Origin: Heteronotia binoei
Taxonomy: Eukaryota
NCBI RefSeq assembly: GCF_032191835.1
Contig: NC_083243.1
Coordinates: forward strand, 190,960,001 to 191,024,000
Direction of reading: 5' to 3'
Length of the DNA stretch: 64,000 bases
In this document: piece after piece, positions 31,461 to 45,519 of the stretch
Layout: the number at the start of each line of letters is the position of its first letter
Position numbering within the stretch: the stretch's first letter is position 1
The notes under the pieces: generated by a model
What the model was told of the DNA's origin: nothing
Databases searched by the model: none
Seen by the model: only the letters and a program-made list of their open reading frames with translations
Made by a program: the position numbers and the translations under genes

Positions 31461-32052
31461 TAAGAACAGCAGTAGATGGTGCCTCTTGAGGCAGGAAGAA
31501 CAGTGTGGTTGAGAGGGAAATGCCTTGAGGGTTATAGTGTCAAACAAGTACGTTGGATGGCCACAGGAGCTCAGGGACTGCATGCAACCCATGTGCAGCA
31601 GGCTGGGAACCAATGGTATAAAAGAAGAAACTAAATAAATGCAGTAAAGCTGGATTACAGAATTAGAGTCCAATGCAAATAAAACTATCTAAAATTTCAC
31701 AGATGTAAAATTTGCATATCAGTTTCTTGGCATGGTAACATACAATGAATTCTGATAATCAGATTTGGTTTAGATAGCCTGCGGAAATGTTTGTTTTATA
31801 TGTCTATCTTCATTCCCCCTGTTTTGTAGAGCGAAGCAGAACAACCAGACATGCTGAAAAACAAAACTTAAGCACTGGGAGGCTGGGTAGCATTTATACC
31901 TTACTCAGAATAGCTTTTAACTGCATGTGCTCCTTAACATTTTTCAATTTAGTATCATTTGCACATTTAATAAGCATTCCCTCTATTCCTTCACCCAAAT
32001 AATTTATAAAGATATTGAACAAAACAGACATTAATGTCAGATGTTTGAGAAC

Positions 32053-32215
32053 AGGAAGGAAGGAAGGAAGGAAGGAAGGAAGGAAGGAAGGAAGGAAGGA
32101 AGGAAGGAAGGAAGGAAGGAAGGAAGGAAGGAAGAGGGAGGGAAGGAGTGAAAGAAAGGAGGGAAAAAGGAAGAAAGAAGGAGAAAAGAAAGAAAGAAAC
32201 AGGAAGAAAGGGGAT
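32053..32215. repeat. (GGAA)n microsatellite and purine tract
   Basis: Direct reading. Confidence 0.95.
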
Positions 32216-32869
32216 GGGAGCAACTCATCTTTAAAACTTCTGACTCTCACAGGAAGTCTGCCTTGCAGTGCTGCTTGGTCCCCTGAACCCCTCCAGCCAG
32301 CGGGATGTCAAGAGGCCACCTGACAAACGCAACTCAGCCCCCTGAGCCCTGGCAGCCAGCCGGGAAGCTGACAGGCCAGCTGGAATGGCGTTCCAGTGCA
32401 TTCTAGCTCAAAAAAAAGCTCTGCATGCATATAAATTGGGCCAGGTGGGAGGCTGCCCTTCCATTCACTCTTTCTCTCTTACCTGCCCTTTTTTGGAGGG
32501 CCCCAATTTTTAAAGTATTTGCATGTATAGATTTTAACCTCAAGGAAGTGTGTTTATTAAGAAATAAATTGCATAGTATTAAATAAGGATTGCAACTCTG
32601 CCATCTGGCAAGTCAGATTCACAATCCATTTTTAAAACCTTCTTCCTAGCCAGTGCATATGGCCCAATACTCCCGAGAACTATAGAGGCAGGGGTCTCTT
32701 TTCTTCTTTCCCATGATTGAAACAAAAATCCCCAGCTAGTGTGGGGTAGATTTGATAAGAAGGGAAGAGGTAGACCCCCAAAATTATACTTCTCTTCTAT
32801 TTATTCAATGATAATATTGAAACACTGCAACTGCTGCTCTGCTAAAAACTCTGCAAAAGGATGTCTGCA

Positions 32870-33774: not shown

Positions 33775-34194
33775 TGCTGTTTCAAAGAAATGAAAAATTG
33801 CAGATGAACATGACGTCTTTAATGACAAATGGACTAGTAATTACTTCTTTTTTTTTTAAACGATAAAGCAGTTTGCGTGATAGGTCTCAAAACTCTCTCA
33901 GTATTAAAGGAGTACAATGTTAAAAGCCACTTTGAGTCCAATCACAAGAGCTACTTAATATGTCAAGAGGTGCAAGTGAACAAGATAAAGTCTCCTTTAA
34001 ATCAATGGTTTTACTGCAAAATAGTTTTCGAAAGCACACTGAGGAGAATCTGTCTACCATGGCCAGCTATCACATTGCTAAATGCATTGGTGAGAGTGGT
34101 AAACCATTCACTGATGGTAAATTTGTTAAAAAGGATATGGCTAAAGTAATGGGACGAAATGTGTCCTGATAAGGTGTCTTGAGTTAGTTGTGTC
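33775..34194 (+). pseudogene. hAT transposase remnant, 5' part (SPIN/GTF2IRD2-like)
   Basis: VLKEYNVKSHFES, MASYHIAKCIGESGKPFTDGKFVKK, EMCPDKV. Confidence 0.8.
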
Positions 34195-35080
34195 GATAGG
34201 TCTAGCCATTGCGCCTAGCACTCGGAAGTCTTACGAGCGGGCCGTGCGGCAGTTTGAAGACTTTCGGGCTGAGGTAGGGTATCGCAGGGTTTGGCCCCTC
34301 CCGGTGGAGGAATTGCTCCATTACTGTGTGTCTTTACGAGGTAAGGGGTTGGCCGTGCGATCTATTAGGGGGTGCCTGTCTGCATTGGCTTTTGCAAGTA
34401 AGGCACTTGGTTATAGGGAAGATACAGCAGATTTTCGTCTTCGAAAGATGCTGGAGGGGTGGGCTAGAGAAGCCGGACCCAGGGCTGATACGCGGAATCC
34501 GGTGTCTCCGTTGATTCTGCAGGGGTTGAAGAGGGTATGGGGCGTGGTGTGTGCCTCGCCTTTTGAGGCATGTTTATTTCATGCCGCGTCCTTGTTGGCC
34601 TTTTTTGGGGCGCTTAGAGTGAGTGAGCTGGTTGCTCAGTCTAGAAACGATGTTTCTGGTAGGGCTTTGCAGCTGAGGGACCTGAGGTTGTTGGGGCCTA
34701 AGGCGGTCATTACTGTCCGTCGCTCGAAGACGGATCAGTTGCAGCGGGGTACTGTGCTCGAGCTGGGTAGTTGTTCAGAGCTCGAGTTGTGTCCAGTTAA
34801 TGCGTTGGCTGCTTATTTGGCAGTGCGCGGGCCCAAGGACGGATTTTTGTTTATACACATGGATGGTAAGCCATTAACGAAGCACCAGTTCTGGGCGGTT
34901 ACGTCTAGGGCGCTGGGTGAGTTAGGGTTATCAGGGGTGCGGTTTGGTACACACTCCTTTAGAATTGGGGTGGCCTCGACAGCGGCTGCTATGGGGTTGC
35001 CTTCCACCTCTATTCAGAGGCTGGGGCGTTGGCGTTCTTCAGCCTATAAGGCATACATCCGCCCCTTTTGCGGGCAATGA
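34190..35080 (+). CDS. tyrosine recombinase of the Ngaro-type element (296 aa open)
   Basis: Catalytic motifs LRVSEL (R), SKTDQ (K), HSFRIG (HxxR), LGRW...YKAY (W,Y); N-terminal APSTRKSY helix. Confidence 0.93.
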   Translation: MSIGLAIAPSTRKSYERAVRQFEDFRAEVGYRRVWPLPVEELLHYCVSLRGKGLAVRSIRGCLSALAFASKALGYREDTADFRLRKMLEGWAREAGPRADTRNPVSPLILQGLKRVWGVVCASPFEACLFHAASLLAFFGALRVSELVAQSRNDVSGRALQLRDLRLLGPKAVITVRRSKTDQLQRGTVLELGSCSELELCPVNALAAYLAVRGPKDGFLFIHMDGKPLTKHQFWAVTSRALGELGLSGVRFGTHSFRIGVASTAAAMGLPSTSIQRLGRWRSSAYKAYIRPFCGQ

Positions 35081-35092
35081 GCGCATTGGATT

Positions 35093-35749
35093 GTGTGCAT
35101 GAGTTGGTTCCGTTTGTGTTTAATGGTTTTTCTCTTTTTAGATGCTGCTGTTCCTGGCCAGAGGAGCCGGTGCCGAGTTCTCATCTGCGGCCATAGCTAC
35201 GTGTTTTGGGCTGGTCTTCAAGCACGGAGAACTGCGGTCGGCTCTCAGCTGGGACTCAGCCAGCATGCGGTTATCGAATGGCAGGGGCGCCGGGGCCTCC
35301 AGTGGCCAGGCTTGCTGCCGTTGTTATTCAAAGGTAGAGCGGGTCCTCCTCCACAGGTCTTAATTGTTCACCTGGGAGGTAATGATCTGGGGTTATTGAA
35401 GGGTAAGGCCTTGGTGTGGCAAGCCCGGGATGACTTCCAGCGCATCAGGGAGCGATGGCCGGAGACCACGATAGTTTGGTCAGCCATGCTGCCCCGCCAA
35501 GTGTGGCGTCATGCTGTGGACCCTGCAGCCTTAGAAAGAGCTAGGTATAAAGCCAATAAAGAAATTAAAAAATTACTTGAAAAGGGTTTGCGCCACTATT
35601 TACCCCATCCGGATATTTCAGCGAGATGTCCTGACCTCTACAGAGGGGATGGGGTGCATCTCTCGGAAAAGGGTAATGTGCTTTTTCTGAGAGATTTGCA
35701 GCAAGGGTTGCGGGTGGCTTTGGGCCTCCCGGTGGGTGCTAAGCCCTAA
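35093..35749 (+). CDS. SGNH/GDSL hydrolase (esterase-like) ORF of the element
   Basis: Block I GHSY, block II G (QGRRG), block III HLGGND, block V DGVHLS; no stops over 218 codons. Confidence 0.88.
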   Translation: MCMSWFRLCLMVFLFLDAAVPGQRSRCRVLICGHSYVFWAGLQARRTAVGSQLGLSQHAVIEWQGRRGLQWPGLLPLLFKGRAGPPPQVLIVHLGGNDLGLLKGKALVWQARDDFQRIRERWPETTIVWSAMLPRQVWRHAVDPAALERARYKANKEIKKLLEKGLRHYLPHPDISARCPDLYRGDGVHLSEKGNVLFLRDLQQGLRVALGLPVGAKP

Positions 35750-35770
35750 GTAGAGACTTGGCCTTATTAG

Positions 35771-36195
35771 TGGCAGGTTTTAGGGGTTTAGGACACTATG
35801 CGGCTAGGGGAGGACTGTGAAGCATCCCCCACTTTGGGGGAAATTTTGGGGTCTGGCATGATTGGCCTTGGGGTTTGGAGACCCGGGTTGGAGAATGCAG
35901 ACTGTCCAGGAGGCTCGGCTAGAGGGTGCCTTTCCGCCAAGACGTGCGTCTGGGTTTGGGCCCTCTGGTGCGGGCCTCCCTGCTGGGCCTGCCTGGAGGG
36001 AGCTGAGCAGCTCAGCTCCAGAAGGGGGGTTGGGTCCTCGCCCGTTAATGGCAGGGGAGCGGTCGCGGTGACCCCTAGCCCTGGCCAGGCCGCTGGTGGG
36101 GTACCCTTGCTGTTCATGTTGTAAGTTAATAAAGTGGCCCAATTTCAATCCAATGCATCGTGTCCGACTCGTTATTCCGACCTTGGTGGGCAATC
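35771..36195 (+). repeat. split direct repeat B1
   Basis: About 6 substitutions versus B2 by eye; AATAAA at ~36127. Confidence 0.9.
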
Positions 36196-36549
36196 GTAAT
36201 CTTGCAGCCTGCAGCGTAGCTGCTAGGCTGCTTAGATCTGTTTGCCCTCCAGGGCGGGAGAGTTGGTCTGCGCGCTGTTTGGGCGCGCTTTGCAGGGGGC
36301 GGGGTTTAGCCGCATCAATGGCTAGCTCCCCGTCCCTCTCCTCAGTCCCTCGACGATCGGCCCTCCCACCCGCCCTGTCTGCTATGTGGGCATTGCTGGT
36401 TGCCTCATTCGGGGAGCCGGGTAGGAATTTTTTACGCCCCAGCTGATTGGCTGGTGCTGGGGCGTGTTTTTCGCCTACCCTGCATAGCAGTGCAGTGGAT
36501 TGTGGAATTAGCTCTGGGAAGGTGCCTTTAAATAGGCGGTCACTTTAGT
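36196..36549 (+). promoter_or_regulatory. A2 repeat with putative promoter
   Basis: GC-rich, reverse CCAAT (ctgattggct ~36443) and TATA-like tttaaata ~36527; promoter role is inferred from Ngaro architecture. Confidence 0.5.
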
Positions 36550-36974
36550 TGGCAGGTTTTAGGGGTTTAGGAGACTATGCGGCTAGGGGAGGACTGTGAA
36601 GCATCCCCCACTTTGGGGGAAATTTTGGGGTCTGGCATGATCGGCCTTGGGGTTTGGAGACCCGGGTTGGAGAATGCAGACTGTCCAGGAGGCTCGGCTA
36701 GAGGGTGCCTTTCCGCCGAGACGTGCGTCTGGGTTTGGGCCCTCTGGTGCGGGCCTCCCTGCTGGGCCTGCCTGGAGGGAGCTGAGCAGCTCAGCTCCGG
36801 AAGGGGGGCTGGGTCCTCGCCCGTTAATGGCAGGGGAGCGGTCGCGGTGACCCCTAGCCCTGGCCAGGCCGCTGGTGGGGTACCCTTGCTGTTCATGTTG
36901 TAAGTTAATAAAGTGGCCCAATTTCAATCCAATGCATTGTGTCCGACTCGTTATTCCGACCTTGGTGGGCAATC
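36550..36974 (+). repeat. split direct repeat B2
   Basis: Copy of B1; ends at ...gggcaatc where the hAT sequence resumes. Confidence 0.9.
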
Positions 36975-37620
36975 ACCAGACATGTGGAAGAATTAGGAGA
37001 AGAGCTGCATATGTCATTGATTGTCAATGCAAAAGTTATGATCCCCCCCCCCCACTTTGGCATTAGATGACAGTGCATTAGATTAGACACTGCTCAACTA
37101 CTAATATTTATCAGGGGAATACATTCCAACTTCAGAATTACACATGAGTTGTGCCCACTGCATTGTTTGAGAGGCACCACAACTGCAGAAAACCTATTCC
37201 TGAAGGTGTGTAAATCTGTAGAAAACTTTGGCCTGAGTTGGAATAAACTGAAAATATTACAATTTATGGTGCAAGAAATACGGCGGGAAGTAAAACTGGT
37301 GTAGTTGCAAGCATCAATGAAGAGATCTTGAAATTAAATGATACACTTTTCATGCAATTTCACTGCATTATCCACCTGCAAGCCATGTGTAGTAACATTC
37401 TTCAGTGGGAAAGTGGAATGTGTATTGTATCCAGCATGAATTACATAAGGCATCATGGCCTTACTCATTGCCAGTTTTGAAATTTCCTCTCAGAGATAGA
37501 TGCTGCATTTGCACTCTGGACTAAAACAATGCTGAGAGTACAATTTCAGTCTTCCAGAGTCTGTCATTTTGGAGAGGGCTATGCAGCATTTTGGGTCCCC
37601 ACGGGAAAAATTCATAAGGC
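36975..37620 (+). pseudogene. hAT transposase remnant, 3' part
   Basis: TRHVEEL, DTAQLLIFIRG, RGTTTAENLF, HCIIH motifs continue the 33775-34194 fragment. Confidence 0.8.
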
Positions 37621-37989: not shown

Positions 37990-38960
37990 AAACGGTAATA
38001 TCCGGATTCAGAAATATTCGGAAATAAATTTTTCGGTATTCCAGATATTAACGAATAGTGGTATTCAGATATATCTGAATATACAGATATATTTGGATAT
38101 ATATGGTATTTGGCTCCTGTTATACTGTATGGGCCATTGAAATCAATGGCAAAATAGGGTATATTGGAGCTACCTGGAGGGGAGGGGGTTTGAGGGAGAG
38201 ACCCCCAAAACTGTAGGGAACCTGCAGGGGAATCTCCCCTACAAAATCCTCAAGTCCCAAAAAGATTGGGTCAGGGGGTCCCATTCCCACCATTATACCC
38301 TATGGGCCATTGAACTCAATGGCAACATAGGGTACACTTAAAGGCTGCTGGGGGACAGCGGGTTTGAGGGAGAGCCCCCCAAAATGCAGGGAACTTGCAG
38401 GGGACTCTCCCCTACAAAACCCCCAAGTTCCAAAATGATTGGGCCAGGGGGTCCTTGTCTGTGGGCTCCCCAAAAGGCCCATTGCTACCAATGCTGGGGA
38501 AAGCCCAATTAGCCACTTCCTCCACTATAATTGCTGTGGGAAAAGTGGCTCTGGCCAGAAGAGGGTTTGAGGGAGAGCCCCCAAAACTGCAGGGCAGCTT
38601 CAGGGGACTCCTCCACATGCAACCCCCATTGCCCAAAAAGACTGCACCCATCTGTGGGCACCCCAAAAGGAACACAGTGAGAAAAAAAACAATTAGCCAT
38701 TTCCCCCACTGTAATTATTGTGGGAAAAGTGGCTCTGGGGAGCAGGAAGTTTTGAGGAGTGCCCCCAAAACTGCTGTGCAGCTTCAGGGCACTGTCCCAC
38801 ACAAAACCCACATGGCCAAAAAAAAAATTGGACCAGGGGGTCCAATTCCTGGGGGAACCAAAGTCAAACCTAACTTCAAATCAGAGAATCTCTATAGGAT
38901 CCCAATGCACTAAATCTATCTACTCTATGCACCCTGGCACCAACATAAACCCAGTTGCCA
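37990..38960. repeat. unclassified element with four diverged ~170-200-bp tandem units
   Basis: Recurrent 'gggtttgagggagagcccccaaaa..ctgcaggg' and 'gattgggccagggggtcc'. Confidence 0.6.
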
Positions 38961-39720: not shown

Positions 39721-41949
39721 GCCCTCATACCTTAAAATTCTTAGCCAGTTTGGAGTTGCCTTGTGGAAGTCAACAGGGCCGAACCAGAACAGTCTTGCTT
39801 CCAGGAGAGAATTTCCAACTCCAGTAAGTGTCATTTGTGTATCTTAGTTTATCTGAACAGAGCACACACACACATATGCCCTGGGTGAAGAGGACCAGAA
39901 CCAGGTGCAATACGAAGGGACTATAAAGTAACCACTGGCCCTGGGGATTCACAGTTTTTAAATTTCCCTAGCACATGACACAAGAGGCATTATTCAAAAG
40001 CCCAAGGTGAGCTACTGACACACTTCATTGTTGCTTTTGATTTTACATTTCCCTATTGACTTCACTACTCCAATAGAGGAAAGCAGAGTCCTAAAATAGA
40101 ACCTAGGTCTCTCGAAATTGCCTTACAGATATGTAAATACTGTGTTTTCAGATCCCACAAGTTTTCTTTTTGGGTGTGTGTGTGTGTGTGTTAACCAAAT
40201 TTATTAAATTTTGCAATATACTGAAATGCATTTCGAATAATAAAAAAGAGAAAAAAGCAACAATTCAATCCTTATCAATACATTACACATTTTTTTTCTC
40301 ACTTCCCCCACCTCTTTTCTTTAACCTCCGTCGGTGCTTCAAGCTATAGAAAAAAAACAATTAAGGTATCATCCATTTTAGAATCTTGCACTATAAAACT
40401 TACATATAATCTAATAACATATCTATATCTCTATTTATAATTCGGTCTTCTAGCTTTCCTTCAGGACATTGTTAACACATCCTGAACTTATATATCTCAA
40501 TATACTAAATCATATCACCTTAACCTTTTAGTTCACCCATAGTATTACACTTATCTTTCATCTATTATCACACCAATTATAGTTATTTATTATAATTATC
40601 TCTATATTTTCTAAAAACTAATAAAAAGAGCTATCATATATTGATTCAAAAAATTCTTTCTAATCATCTATCTCCCTCATTTCCCCCAATTTCAGGTTAT
40701 ACTTTCAAAAACCACCAAATGTCTCTTAACTCTCCATTGCTTTTCAATATAGTCCTGAAACTTCTTCCATTCATCTTTAAATTTTTCTGCATCACTCTCT
40801 TTCAAGATTCTAGTAAGTCTATCCATTTCACTCCAATGTAAAATTTTTAAAATCCAGTCCCATTTATCTGGTATTTCAGCTTGCTTCCACCTTTGTGCAA
40901 ACAATGTTCTTGCAGCTGACAACATATACCACACCAAAGTCCTGTCTTGCTTCGGAAAACTTTCCATTTGTAATCCTACCAGAAAGGTATCTGGTGTCCT
41001 TTTAACTCCACATCCCCAAATCTTTGACATCTCTTGTCGGATCATTTGCCAAAATTGTCTCGCTTTTTCACAAGTCCACCACATATGGTAAAAAGAGCCT
41101 TCATGCTTTTTACATTTCCAGCACCTTTTTCAATTGGATCATTCAATGTTTCTTTCATCATTTCTGTTGTTGGATTTACCTTCACATTTTGTAAATAAGC
41201 TTCTATTCTTTATCAACTCGCTGGCCTTTAAATAAGTTAGCATAGTACTTGTAGTACTTGTAGAATTCTCTTTTGATGCCCTCCTGAACTACAATTTCTT
41301 TGACACCTGTTTTAATCTTGTTTATGTATTTATTTTCTCTTCTTTTCTTCATTTGCCACACCAAATACTTTCCAGGTTTATCTGCCCCTTCAAAAGATTT
41401 TTGTTGGAGTCTTTTCAAATTCCACTCCACCTCTTTATTCAGTAAATGACTTAACTAGCTCTGTAAAACGACCCTTGGCACTTACCGTGAGGGGTCCTTC
41501 TCCTAGGAGGAAAGGAGGACATCTTGGGTGCTTTCCCACCGTCCAATCAGGGAGGCAGGAATCAAAACTTCCTCTTCCTGTGGCTGTGGGGAACCACCCA
41601 TCTTCAGTTCGGGTGACTCCGAGCAGCAGTATAACGTTAACTGTATCTATAAAAATAAAAACTTCTAACAAGTGAAACAACAACAACTATTAGTCTGTCG
41701 GTGCCCATAAAGGAGATGGGCGATCGACGAAGGTATAAACTTTATTGATAGGAAAAGTAGGGAACAGGCCCGAAGGCCAAGTGGAGAATTCAGCTGCCCG
41801 AGGTAGGGCGATAGATGGGAGGGCAAGATGTCCTCCTTTCCTCCTAGGAGAAGGACCCCTCACGGTAAGTGCCAAGGGTCGTTCTCCCTAGGAGGCGGAG
41901 GACATCTTGGGTGCTCCTAGAGCAGTAGGTTACTTAGGGAGGGATCGCC

Positions 41950-43020
41950 CTACTCAGGCAGTACATGCTGTAAGATTCGTCTACCGAAGGCCGCATCCGC
42001 CGACGCGTAAGAGTTCAGCTTGTAGTGTTGAACGAAGGTGGAGATTGACGACCACGTAGCTGCCTTACACACTTCCTCGACTGAGGCGTTCCTGCTGAAG
42101 GCTGCGTTGGCGGCTGCGCTTCTGGTCGAGTGTGCTGTGATCCCAGGCGGAACCTCGAGGTGCAAGGCCTTGTAGGCCTCCGCTATGCACTGCTTAATGG
42201 CATGACTAATGGCCGACTTGGACATCTTTTGCCCCAATCTGGGTGCAGAGATATTGATGAACATAGAGTCTGACTTACGTAGTGACTCTGTTCTAATCAG
42301 GTAGACTTTGATCGCCCTGCGCACGTCCAGGGTGTGCCAGGTTCGTTCCTTGGGGTGTCTGGGATCCGGACAAAAGGATGGTAGGTTGATCTCTTGATTT
42401 TGGTGGAATCTGGATGACACCTTTGGTTGGAAGGTAGGATCCGGGTAGAGTACGACTTTGTCCTTGTGGAACACGCATAGCTCCTTCCTAGCAGATAGAG
42501 CTCCTAACTCGGAGACCCTTCTGGCCGATGTTATTGCCACCAGGAAAATCGTCTTCATGTGAAGCATCTTTAAGGGCACTTGCATGAGCGGTTCGAAGGG
42601 TGGACCTGTTAGGGCGGTCAGCACTGGGTTCAGCCTCCAGGTCGGGAACCGATGGGTCTGCGGTGGGGAGCTTAAGGAAGCCCCTCTAAGGAACCGTCGG
42701 ATGTGAGGGTGAGACGACAGGGATACACCATCCACCTGCTGAAGTACTGATGACAGTGCCGCGATCTGGCGTTTGAGGGTGGCTGGCTTCAGGCCGGACT
42801 GTAGCCCATCCTGAAGGAATTGTAGCACCCTGGGAACAGTAGGGTGTAATGGATCCACACTCTTTCTCCGGCACCACCTGTGGAAGGCTTTCCAAGACAT
42901 GTTGTAGATCCGCGTCGTGGATTCCTTTCTGGATGCTAAGATGGTATTCGTCACCTCGCTGGTGTACCCTAGGTCTAGAAGCGATCTCCTCTCAACCTCC
43001 ACGCGGTCAATCTCAGCCAT
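41950..43020 (-). CDS. DIRS tyrosine recombinase (open, from MAEIDR)
   Basis: ITSARRVSEL (R), AHSTRS (HxxR), AATW (W), FVQHY (Y). Confidence 0.92.
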   Translation of the reverse strand: MAEIDRVEVERRSLLDLGYTSEVTNTILASRKESTTRIYNMSWKAFHRWCRRKSVDPLHPTVPRVLQFLQDGLQSGLKPATLKRQIAALSSVLQQVDGVSLSSHPHIRRFLRGASLSSPPQTHRFPTWRLNPVLTALTGPPFEPLMQVPLKMLHMKTIFLVAITSARRVSELGALSARKELCVFHKDKVVLYPDPTFQPKVSSRFHQNQEINLPSFCPDPRHPKERTWHTLDVRRAIKVYLIRTESLRKSDSMFINISAPRLGQKMSKSAISHAIKQCIAEAYKALHLEVPPGITAHSTRSAAANAAFSRNASVEEVCKAATWSSISTFVQHYKLNSYASADAAFGRRILQHVLPE

Positions 43021-43748: not shown

Positions 43749-45519
43749 TCCCACCTGGAGACAGGCAACCTTACAAAAAACAAAGTAGTATGCACATCTT
43801 CCATCCAGGTATTTCTCTGGCTGGGAAGAGGCTGTCTCTGTGAGAGACTGCAATATTAAAAAAGTTTGGTAATGAACAACTTTTGAAATTATATCTTTTT
43901 AGACCCAAAATCAGAAGATGAGAATTCAAAATAGCACAAAAAATACCTCAACTGTATTTCCACACTATTTCCACCCTCCCCCCCCTCCAGATGTGAAAGG
44001 AGGGGAAGGTTTGAACAGACAAACCAAAATTCCTTCCCTCTTGGATTAGGTGATGCTTACCTTAACAAAGGCTAAAAACAGACACAATGGATTTGGCCAG
44101 TACTCTTATCTGACCCTGATAAGTTTTTACAAAGGAAAGGTGGAGGGGGAGAATAATGAGCTTTCTGCCTGGGTGGGACTCAAAATTGTAACTCTTTCCA
44201 GTTTCTTTAACTCAAGCTGAATTTGGCTGAGTTTAATTCAAGAGGGTCTGCATGAGATTTGCCAATCAGTACTACATTAGTTGTTGCTGCTCCTGCAGCT
44301 GGAGGTTCTACTTTCTGTACTTTCAGATTTAAATGACAAACTTGCCCATTTGAGGTTAGCTGTCTTGTGTTACTGTGACCTTTGAGAAGGAGAGGCAACA
44401 CCTCTTATATTACAAACACTGAATTTGATCTTTTCTGAGGCTCTGCAAGAAAACTTTCCTAGCCAGCCATCCACTGGAAGATATTGGGACAAGTTCTGTA
44501 CAAGAATGGTGGCAAACCAAAAACTGTGGTTCCTCTTGCCACTGGCTAGTTATAGGTCTATAAGAAAATGAGGCTTTCTCTCAAAGACACTGAGTTGCTT
44601 GTACCTTAAGGAGACCTGAGATAAACAAAAATTTAATTTCTCAGGGCAATGCATTTAAAATTCTATTCCTTTGCCTTAGTTGCTTATCAAATCTTTACTG
44701 CTACAGATTTCCATTGAGCAAGAGGGAGAACAATTAGCATTTCTTCCTGATGGCAGGAGTGCTGAGCATTTGCATATTTTAGCCAGTTCTATTTGGGCTA
44801 ATCTGCAGGCACTCTGTACAAGCTCAGAGGCTATACCATTTAAATTTCATAGAACTGAGGAAATAAATATTTCCTGACTTTATAAGCAAGAGAGAGAAAG
44901 ATGAACTTGGGAGTTTCACAGATTTTCATTCAGCCAATTTGAAAGTTAAAACTGGTCAGTTTCTTACATTTTGCTATAAATGCTTTGAATGAATAAAAAC
45001 TAGTTCAATCTCTCTTTCTCAGGTACTTGATGCTGGCATCTTTAAAGGGTTAACCTAAATATATTACATCAAGCTCCCATTACCCTGCAGAGAAAACTAA
45101 CTCTGCAGGCTGGAACCCTTGCTGGGATTCCAGGAGATCTCCAGGCCTCACCTGGAGAAATGGCCTGGTCTAATTGTAGTCCAAGTCATTGCTTGTATGT
45201 TTTCTTGTTTAGTCAAGGGAAAAGGCGCCCTTGTTACCTTTAAACCTAATAAAGCCAGATCTCTCTGTTTTAAGAGACATACAAGTCTAGATGTTAGATT
45301 TTCCTTTGGGTAGGGGGGGAGGTTCAGAGACAAAGGAACCTTGCCTGCCCATGCGGGACAACCATTCCCTGAGGTTCCACAGAATTCTGGCTTTCAAATT
45401 CCCCAAATGGGATGAGCTAAAGACAGAAAATTTCTGGCGTAAAGGGCTGAGGCTTGCTCATGTAGCAGTGTCTGGAGCAAGTCCTTGCTAAAGGAATACC
45501 TTGTGCCATAAGTGGGGAA
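43749..45519. other. foreign host-like DNA inside the DIRS
   Basis: AT-rich, CpG-poor, no DIRS homology; contains MITE-end remnants at ~43750-43772 and ~45120-45160. Confidence 0.75.

What the first reader, a model, noticed from the sequence alone, without database searches (positions are those of the whole stretch)
34195..36974. Young Ngaro-type YR retroelement carrying an intact SGNH hydrolase gene
Seen: an uninterrupted 296-aa YR with all catalytic motifs, then 12 bp later an uninterrupted 218-codon ORF with SGNH blocks (GHS, G, GGND, DGVH), then B1-A2-B2 repeats with only ~6 differences in 425 bp and abundant CpGs. Established: Ngaro elements have split direct repeats, some vertebrate ones encode an SGNH hydrolase, and related esterase domains occur in ORF1p of some CR1/L2 LINEs where lipid or membrane binding has been proposed. 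Inference: a recently active reptile family in which the esterase is maintained. Its substrate and role (RNP membrane targeting, particle egress, host-protein deacylation) are, to my knowledge, unresolved.
Basis: partly seen in the sequence, partly recalled or inferred. Interest (0 to 1): 0.75.

Follow-up and report, generated by a model that had tools for sequence, protein, structure and literature searches.

The report
Truncated gecko Ngaro retrotransposon copy
This is a young but front-truncated, non-autonomous copy of a known kind of jumping gene (a Ngaro retrotransposon) in a gecko-like genome. Its lipase-like "extra gene" is best read as a spliced exon related to the esterase of some LINE elements.

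Summary
There is an open 296-codon tyrosine recombinase (YR) frame at 34190-35080. An open 218-codon SGNH/GDSL frame follows 12 bp later at 35093-35749. Then come B1-A2-B2 repeats with 6 differences in 424 nt, and the element is rich in CpG.

The copy is not an intact element. It is a 2.78-kb insert (34195-36974) cut off at the front: no gag, no RT/RNase H, no A1 repeat. The YR frame has lost its N-terminus and has no ATG.

Ngaro elements with an SGNH ORF after the YR are already published for fish and amphibians, so this is a new member of a known kind. Environmental relatives of the YR show the order gag-like ORF, RT/RNase H, YR, SGNH.

The added point is that the SGNH "ORF start" is a polypyrimidine tract plus AG. 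Lizard gene models join a shared 138-residue N-terminal leader to exactly this point, or to the YR. A same-phase acceptor-like site recurs in 23 of 27 divergent relatives. No spliced read was seen.

The esterase's best solved relative by sequence is the zebrafish L2 LINE ORF1p esterase. The scan had already noted the same splice idea on other pieces of this genome.

The parts
34195..36974 (+). Whole insert: 5'-truncated Ngaro-like copy (2780 bp). It has no gag, no RT/RNase H and no A1.
   Evidence: The GC and CpG jump sits at these borders. Homology to relatives' YR begins at 34193-34195. Flanking frames read like one decayed ORF on both sides. RNA reads cover the element but not the 33900-34166 flank.
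34190..35080 (+). Tyrosine recombinase frame of 296 codons, with TGA at 35078-35080. It is N-terminally truncated and has no ATG before codon 87.
   Evidence: R143, K180, H255, R258, W281 and Y289 are present. It is 57-65% identical to gecko YR proteins.
35127..35141 (+). Polypyrimidine tract (35127-35139) plus AG (35140-35141): a candidate 3' splice site. The exon would start at 35142 in phase 1.
   Evidence: Alignments of the gene models P0001 and P0002 to the window both start at 35141. Acceptor-like sites are enriched in relatives (16/30 against 15% in controls). The same phase recurs in 23/27 relatives.
35142..35749 (+). SGNH/GDSL esterase exon, stop at 35747-35749. S35 lies at 35195, N97 at 35381, D186 at 35648 and H189 at 35657.
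35771..36194 (+). B1 repeat, with AATAAA at 36128-36133.
   Evidence: 58 RNA-seq fragment ends lie at 36138/36139.
36195..36549 (+). A2 repeat unit, single copy in the window. It contains a hairpin with a U-rich internal loop at 36416-36483.
   Evidence: One search finds no second copy. The fold gives -39.6 kcal/mol, z = -4.2. There is no Rfam match.
36550..36974 (+). B2 repeat, with AATAAA at 36907-36912. This is the 3' end of the element.

Best explanation
Window 34195-36974 is a young, 5'-truncated and therefore non-autonomous copy of a gecko Ngaro-like (DIRS-order) tyrosine-recombinase retrotransposon. It sits inside an old decayed transposon remnant.

Shown: it keeps most of the YR coding region, the short YR-SGNH spacer, the SGNH esterase coding region and the 3' split direct repeats B1-A2-B2. 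It has lost A1, gag, RT/RNase H and the start of the YR.

Inferred, for intact family members:
- The genomic RNA serves gag and RT/RNase H.
- The YR and the esterase are made from spliced RNAs. One phase-1 donor, about 125-140 codons into gag, would be joined to either of two phase-1 acceptors.
- The esterase product would then be a basic, two-helix leader, a flexible linker and an SGNH esterase. That layout matches the coiled-coil-plus-esterase ORF1p of CR1/L2 LINEs, for which membrane and lipid binding has been shown.

This copy has no donor, leader or promoter repeat in cis, so it most likely makes no protein. Its open frames reflect its youth.
For: Anatomy.

Domains and catalytic residues.

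Family context:
- About 30 metagenomic relatives carry an SGNH ORF right after the YR.
- In 10 of 10 tested, the ORF upstream of the YR has RVT_1. Further upstream lie ORFs starting MPPKR/MGRKR, like the lizard leader.
- The literature defines Ngaro by A1...B1A2B2 repeats and reports SGNH after the YR in amphibians (PMC9210276, PMC6681497).

Youth: B1/B2 differ at 6 of 424 positions, and CpG observed/expected is 0.62.

Splicing:
- P0073 and P0018 share 137 of their first 138 residues, then continue into YR and SGNH respectively.
- Leader-SGNH models exist in seven squamate genera.
- P0001 and P0002 align to the window starting exactly after the AG.
- 14 of 31 relatives with a recognisable block I have no Met before it.
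- Acceptor-like sites are enriched, p = 1e-6. The phase is conserved in 23/27, p = 4e-8.

Esterase: AF2 gives pLDDT 89 with an SGNH fold. The best PDB sequence match is the ZfL2-1 ORF1p esterase. AF2 of a leader-SGNH model shows two helices, a disordered linker and the domain.

Selection: the listed read differences are biased to synonymous sites. In distant pairs dS is saturated at dN 0.2-0.27.
Against: - No RT, gag or A1 can be seen for this family in the window. The RT link rests on relatives of only 30-42% identity, on the literature, and on unchecked scan notes.
- No spliced read was seen. The donor is absent from this copy. In run X6, reads crossing 35132 (27 deep) are about as many as at 35171 (29), so most RNA there is unspliced, or is DNA.
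- The gene models are automatic predictions.
- The YR acceptor-like CAG coincides with the conserved RNase H motif AD.LSRFQ. Its conservation is therefore confounded by coding constraint.
- The relatives are not phylogenetically independent.
- Split direct repeats were not found in the metagenomic contigs.
- The synonymous/non-synonymous counts use only the 25 coding-region differences among the 40 rows listed, out of 181 differences in all.
Confidence: 0.8

Rival explanations
1. An RT-less mobile unit made only of YR, SGNH and repeats. It would be Crypton-like, or a non-autonomous element moved in trans, and would transpose as such.
For: The fragment seems cleanly inserted, with host frames continuing on both sides. 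It holds a recombinase with a full catalytic set and the 3' repeats. Gene models never include an RT.
Against: The YR lacks its N-terminus, start codon and acceptor. There is no A1. All 10 tested relatives have an RT ORF overlapping the YR start. The spliced YR models begin with DGA, which is the frame-shifted reading of the sequence just after the RNase H motif, so an RNase H region lies upstream in intact copies. An earlier scan note on a similar RT-less unit found differing breakpoints (s1-335902, not checked by me).
Confidence: 0.07
2. The SGNH ORF is a stand-alone gene. It would be translated from the ATG at 35099 with an N-terminal signal peptide, giving a secreted or membrane-bound esterase.
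For: An ATG lies at codon 3, followed by a hydrophobic stretch. RNA reads cross the region unspliced.
Against: The hydrophobic stretch is what a T/C-rich tract encodes (Phe, Leu, Ser). Residues 1-18 are disordered in the model. 14 of 31 relatives with a recognisable block I have no Met before it, and others have one only 2-8 residues before it. The gene models start the exon exactly after the AG.
Confidence: 0.1
3. The YR and/or SGNH here are domesticated host genes kept by selection at this locus.
For: NCBI annotates relatives as genes ('integrase/recombinase xerD homolog', 'uncharacterized protein LOC...'). Both frames are open.
Against: The sequence is a CpG-rich young insert inside a decayed repeat. 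It is flanked by element repeats. Many paralogs exist per genome. Reads are mostly from 90-99% alike copies. This exact protein is not in the protein collection. Open frames are expected by chance at this age.
Confidence: 0.03

Closest known systems
Ngaro-like retrotransposons of fish and amphibians (for example DIRS-53_XT of Xenopus tropicalis; Goodwin and Poulter 2004 as cited in PMC9210276)
   Same: The YR is followed by an SGNH hydrolase ORF, with split direct repeats B1-A2-B2 at the 3' end. No target-site duplication was noticed. The function of the hydrolase is unproven.
   Different: This copy lacks A1, gag and RT/RNase H. The host is a gecko-like squamate. The published view is overlapping ORFs, with a -1 frameshift proposed for the YR (Poulter and Butler 2015, as quoted in PMC13003380). 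The evidence here points to splicing for the SGNH and probably the YR.
Esterase domain of ZfL2-1 (CR1/L2 LINE) ORF1p, PDB 4c1b (PMC3905857)
   Same: It is the best solved relative by sequence, at E 1.4e-14 against 3e-5 for PAF-AH. It has the SGNH fold and the catalytic Ser/Gly/Asn/Asp-His. If the splice is real, the product also has N-terminal helices ahead of the esterase.
   Different: It sits at the 3' end of a YR retrotransposon, not in ORF1 of a LINE. Coiled-coil formation by the leader is not shown. Esterase activity and lipid binding are untested.
PAF acetylhydrolase Ib catalytic subunits and bacterial GDSL esterases
   Same: These are the top fold matches (Foldseek probability 1.0, TM about 0.62-0.65). 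Some database names for the lizard proteins borrow this label.
   Different: Sequence identity is only about 20%. They are cellular enzymes with no transposon context.
Retroviral env-type subgenomic splicing
   Same: A 5' leader exon is joined to downstream ORFs that lack their own start codon, with alternative acceptors for different products.
   Different: Here the leader would contribute about 125-140 coding residues of gag to both products. The element is of the DIRS order, for which I found no published splicing.

Membership tests
Ngaro-like (order DIRS) retrotransposon | Tyrosine recombinase with the R-K-H-R-(H/W)-Y catalytic set | tested here: met
   PF00589 at E 1e-8. R143, K180, H255, R258, W281 and Y289 are present.
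Ngaro-like (order DIRS) retrotransposon | Reverse transcriptase/RNase H ORF upstream of the YR | tested here: inconclusive
   Absent from this copy because of the 5' truncation at 34195. Present in 10 of 10 tested relatives of the YR+SGNH clade. I therefore file this as a fragment of a member.
Ngaro-like (order DIRS) retrotransposon | Split direct repeats A1 ... B1 A2 B2 | tested here: inconclusive
   B1-A2-B2 is present, with B1/B2 at 98.6%. A1 is missing from this copy. The repeats were not recoverable in the short-read metagenomic contigs of relatives.
Ngaro-like (order DIRS) retrotransposon | No methyltransferase domain; optional SGNH ORF after the YR | tested here: met
   The SGNH ORF follows 12 bp after the YR stop. 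No other domain lies between the YR and the repeats.
SGNH/GDSL hydrolase | Blocks I, II, III and V with Ser, Gly, Asn, Asp-x-x-His, and the flavodoxin-like fold | tested here: met
   S35, G68, N97, D186 and H189 are present. The AF2 model has pLDDT 89.4. Foldseek hits to PAF-AH and GDSL esterases have probability 1.0. Triad geometry could not be measured because no coordinates are given.
SGNH/GDSL hydrolase | Esterase activity | not testable with these tools
   This needs an enzyme assay.
Esterase-type retrotransposon ORF1p (coiled coil + esterase, as in ZfL2-1) | N-terminal oligomerising coiled coil fused to the esterase | tested here: inconclusive
   Leader-SGNH gene models show two helices (35-54 and 72-94) and a disordered linker. 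The homodimer prediction gave no verdict. The fusion depends on an unobserved splice.

The most novel reading that the evidence does not exclude
Ngaro retrotransposons across animals express their start-codon-less YR and SGNH ORFs by retrovirus-like alternative splicing. One phase-1 donor in the 5' part of gag would be joined to two phase-1 acceptors. The esterase product would be a gag-N-terminus/esterase fusion with the same layout as the coiled-coil-plus-esterase ORF1p of CR1/L2 LINEs, and homologous to it. That would imply a shared membrane- or lipid-directed step in two unrelated retrotransposon orders.
Probability: 0.55. Interest if true: 0.65.

Novelty: new member of a known kind. Interest (0 to 1): 0.35.

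Why it matters
As an element, this is an ordinary dead copy. It documents a recently active Ngaro lineage with an esterase in a gecko-like genome.

Its value is as one more data point on how and why YR retrotransposons carry an esterase. The spacer in this copy preserves the candidate 3' splice site. The same-phase site recurs in divergent relatives, and the enzyme's nearest solved relative by sequence is a LINE ORF1p esterase.

If confirmed by RNA data, this would replace the 'extra ORF of unknown expression' picture with a defined fusion protein that can be made and assayed.

Tried and rejected
Neither A1 nor the copy-by-copy state of the ORF could be checked.
- A word search with the leader alone found only 4 proteins, none with an RT. 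The length limits of that tool make this uninformative.
- The ESM Atlas look-up for the YR returned only eukaryotic integrase clusters, with no context.
- The repeat search in 8 metagenomic relatives found no split direct repeats, probably because the repeats collapse in short-read assembly.
- Stop-codon read-through from YR into SGNH: the two frames agree here, but in only 14 of 28 relatives by my count, so I rejected it as the general mechanism.
- The acceptor-like CAG 95 nt before the YR core is position-conserved but lies on the RNase H motif AD.LSRFQ. I do not count it as independent evidence.
- Candidate phase-1 donors exist in the gag-like ORFs of relatives. There was no valid control for coding bias, so they are not used as evidence.
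- Pairwise dN/dS among relatives: dS was saturated for the two usable SGNH pairs. The first attempt timed out.
- The homodimer prediction of the leader helices gave no verdict, neither for nor against.
- Rfam found nothing in 34100-37100.
- Pfam found nothing in the leader or the gag-like ORFs.
The window's exon was searched by reference only.
Full report
**What is there**

The window holds two adjacent open frames on the + strand: 34190-35080 (296 codons) and 35093-35749 (218 codons). Pfam assigns them to Phage_integrase (E 1e-8) and Lipase_GDSL_2 (E 1.4e-8), both above the curated cut-offs.

Behind them lie two direct repeats, B1 at 35771-36194 and B2 at 36550-36974. They are separated by a 355-bp unit, A2, that has no other copy in the window. 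B1 and B2 differ at 6 of 424 positions, and four of these are CpG transitions.

GC is 57% and CpG observed/expected is 0.62 inside the element, against 42-43% and 0.18-0.27 in the flanks.

**What is missing**

Nothing in the 64-kb window resembles the element's A2 unit, a reverse transcriptase belonging to it, or a gag.

Alignment with 19 relatives shows that homology starts at the second or third codon of the YR frame. Relatives carry at least 10 more N-terminal residues. In the spliced gene models about 30 more residues plus a leader precede this point.

The frame opens on GTG, and its first ATG is codon 87. The frames on both sides of 34195 and 36974 read like one decayed ORF. A weak SPIN-DOC-type zinc-finger match lies upstream. 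That the host frame continues across the insert is my reading from memory of hAT-derived proteins, not a tested result.

The insert is thus a 2780-bp, 5'-truncated copy with no target duplication that I could see. It cannot be autonomous.

**Which family**

The open literature defines Ngaro-like elements by split direct repeats, A1 at the 5' end and B1-A2-B2 at the 3' end. It also cites the absence of the DIRS methyltransferase and, in amphibians, an SGNH hydrolase ORF after the YR 'with no proven function' (PMC9210276; also PMC6681497, PMC13465315).

The genome is a gecko or near it. The best SGNH hit is a Heteronotia binoei protein at 94% identity, followed by dozens of Eublepharis, Gekko, Anolis, Pogona, Elgaria and Rhineura proteins. 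The YR finds 'xerD homolog' proteins of the same species at 57-65% identity.

Instead I fetched 80 metagenomic loci encoding YR relatives of 29-42% identity.
- About 30 of them have an SGNH ORF directly behind the YR.
- In all 10 I tested, the ORF overlapping the YR start carries RVT_1, and two of them also RT_RNaseH.
- A further ORF upstream begins MPPKR.. or MGRKR...

The YR+SGNH clade is therefore gag-like ORF, RT/RNase H, YR, SGNH, which is the published Ngaro plan. Split direct repeats were not recovered in those short-read contigs.

**Age and selection**

Six differences in 424 nt would correspond to about 7 Myr, assuming about 1e-9 substitutions per site per year. That rate is my assumption. 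The two non-CpG differences alone give about 2-3 Myr.

At that age the chance that the 654-nt SGNH frame has acquired no stop codon is about 0.6-0.8. The open frames in this copy therefore say nothing about selection on it.

At family level there is a signal. Among the differences that read laying listed between this copy and RNA-library reads of its relatives, the YR shows 7 synonymous against 2 non-synonymous changes. The SGNH shows 7 against 8, or 7 against 6 within the exon. This gives pN/pS of about 0.10 and about 0.3, with combined p = 1e-4. Only 40 of the 181 differences were listed, and 25 of those fall in or next to the coding frames, so this is a rough estimate.

Between distant relatives, dS is saturated while dN is 0.2-0.27. 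The catalytic residues are invariant or nearly so across 27 homologs.

**RNA**

Four RNA libraries of the same or a close species were laid on 33900-36540.
- The single-copy flank has zero depth. The element is covered, mostly by reads 90-99% alike, which come from other copies.
- Depth is strongly 3'-biased.
- 58 fragment ends pile up at 36138/36139, a few bases after AATAAA (36128-36133) in B.

This is compatible with polyadenylated family transcripts. However, DNA carry-over and the excess of truncated copies could also give a 3' bias.

**How the esterase is probably expressed**

The region just before the SGNH domain is T/C-rich and ends in AG (35127-35141). Several lines point to a 3' splice site there:
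- Alignments of the H. binoei model P0001 and the Eublepharis model P0002 to the window both begin exactly at 35141. Upstream of that point these proteins carry a leader of about 125-140 residues that is absent from the window.
- The same leader (MPPKKG..KGK..SSSDDE, then two ..LARL.ALE.. helices) heads SGNH models in seven squamate genera. It also heads YR models in Eublepharis, Anolis and Pogona.
- Two Eublepharis models share 137 of their first 138 residues, then continue into the YR and the SGNH respectively. That is one donor with two acceptors.
- Independently of any annotation, 14 of 31 relatives with a recognisable block I have no Met before it.
- A polypyrimidine+YAG site lies within 46 nt upstream of block I in 16 of 30 non-redundant loci, against 15% at random positions (p = 1e-6).
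- The best such site is in the same phase in 23 of 27 loci (p = 4e-8). In that phase two exon bases complete a codon. This copy has the same phase.
- The spacers themselves are not alignable, so the signal is positional, not inherited sequence.

The hydrophobic 'signal peptide' look of codons 3-16 is what a T/C tract encodes. Those residues are disordered in the AF2 model.

Against the splice:
- No spliced read was seen. The donor is not in this copy.
- Reads crossing 35132 are about as deep as those at 35171, so most molecules there are unspliced.
- The gene models are automatic.
- The YR acceptor-like CAG overlaps the RNase H motif AD.LSRFQ, so its conservation is confounded.

The window exon was searched by reference only.

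**What the enzyme resembles**

- A 27-sequence profile finds the esterase of the zebrafish ZfL2-1 LINE ORF1p (4c1b) as its best solved relative, at E 1.4e-14. PAF acetylhydrolase follows at 3e-5.
- The AF2 model (pLDDT 89.4) is an SGNH fold. Foldseek puts PAF-AH and bacterial GDSL esterases on top.
- ZfL2-1 ORF1p is a dimerising coiled coil plus an active esterase that binds acidic phospholipids and liposomes (PMC3905857).
- An AF2 model of a leader-SGNH protein shows two helices, a disordered linker and the domain. The layout is parallel, but oligomerisation is not shown (one search gave no verdict).
- I found no open paper that connects Ngaro with LINE esterases or with splicing. The one mechanism quoted for the YR is a -1 frameshift (PMC13003380).

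**Earlier notes of this scan**

After I had derived the above, the scan's index showed several notes on other pieces of the same genome. They propose the same gag-leader/esterase (and YR) splice, describe full-length copies, and describe an ENE-like hairpin in the 3' spacer. They agree with my reading but are unchecked AI notes, not independent evidence.

The hairpin is also present here at 36416-36483. It has two facing U-runs, a folding energy of -39.6 kcal/mol and z = -4.2. It has no Rfam match.

**Verdict**

This is a new member of a known kind, represented here by a dead truncated copy. The most interesting reading is the conserved splice that makes an ORF1p-like esterase fusion. It is plausible (about 0.55) but still lacks a spliced RNA.

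Noticed in passing
window 36416-36483 (+), inside A2: A strong hairpin: a 7-bp outer stem, a symmetric 7x7 internal loop made of facing U-runs, and an 11-bp inner stem. Energy is -39.6 kcal/mol, z = -4.2, with no Rfam match. It resembles the ENE-like element that the scan noted in other Ngaro copies. RNA depth is high over 36392-36540.
   Followed up: partly
L050:1229-1903, L052:235-909, L063:3-674: In some metagenomic YR retroelements the SGNH ORF lies about 0.5 kb upstream of the gag-like ORF, on the same strand, and not after the YR. This is either a different gene order or contigs permuted through collapsed B/A repeats.
   Followed up: partly
proteins P0049, P0052, P0054 (turtle, unnamed Logan contig, rattlesnake): Block V reads DGVLLS instead of DGVHLS, so the catalytic His is replaced in this sub-lineage of the SGNH homologs.
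   Followed up: no
protein P0001 (Heteronotia binoei model): Homology to the window's SGNH ends at residue 276. The model continues with unrelated sequence and so lacks block V. That locus is either broken or mis-modelled.
   Followed up: no
window 42487-42966 (-), and 41467-41526 / 41824-41883: A second, distant YR-like similarity lies on the minus strand (26-27% to P0070 and P0074). It sits next to a perfect 60-nt inverted repeat. It probably belongs to the separate DIRS-like element noted by the scan at 43749-45519.
   Followed up: no
window 33841-34166 and 36975-37301 (+): The flanks of the insert read as pieces of one decayed ORF, with a weak SPIN-DOC-type zinc-finger match (E 9e-4). This looks like an old hAT-derived remnant into which the Ngaro fragment inserted.
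   Followed up: partly
loci L001-L040, about 95 nt before the YR core: The RNase H C-terminal motif AD.LSRFQ is encoded by a T/C-rich stretch ending in CAG. Lizard gene models use exactly this CAG as the YR exon boundary. A coding motif may be doubling as a splice acceptor.
   Followed up: partly
window 38120-38841 (+): Several copies of a repeat of about 175-200 bp, 64-90% alike (families D2, D3 and D7).
   Followed up: no
window 31894-32323: A purine-rich microsatellite gives long mechanical ORFs on both strands, with (GRKE)n and (LPSF)n translations.
   Followed up: no
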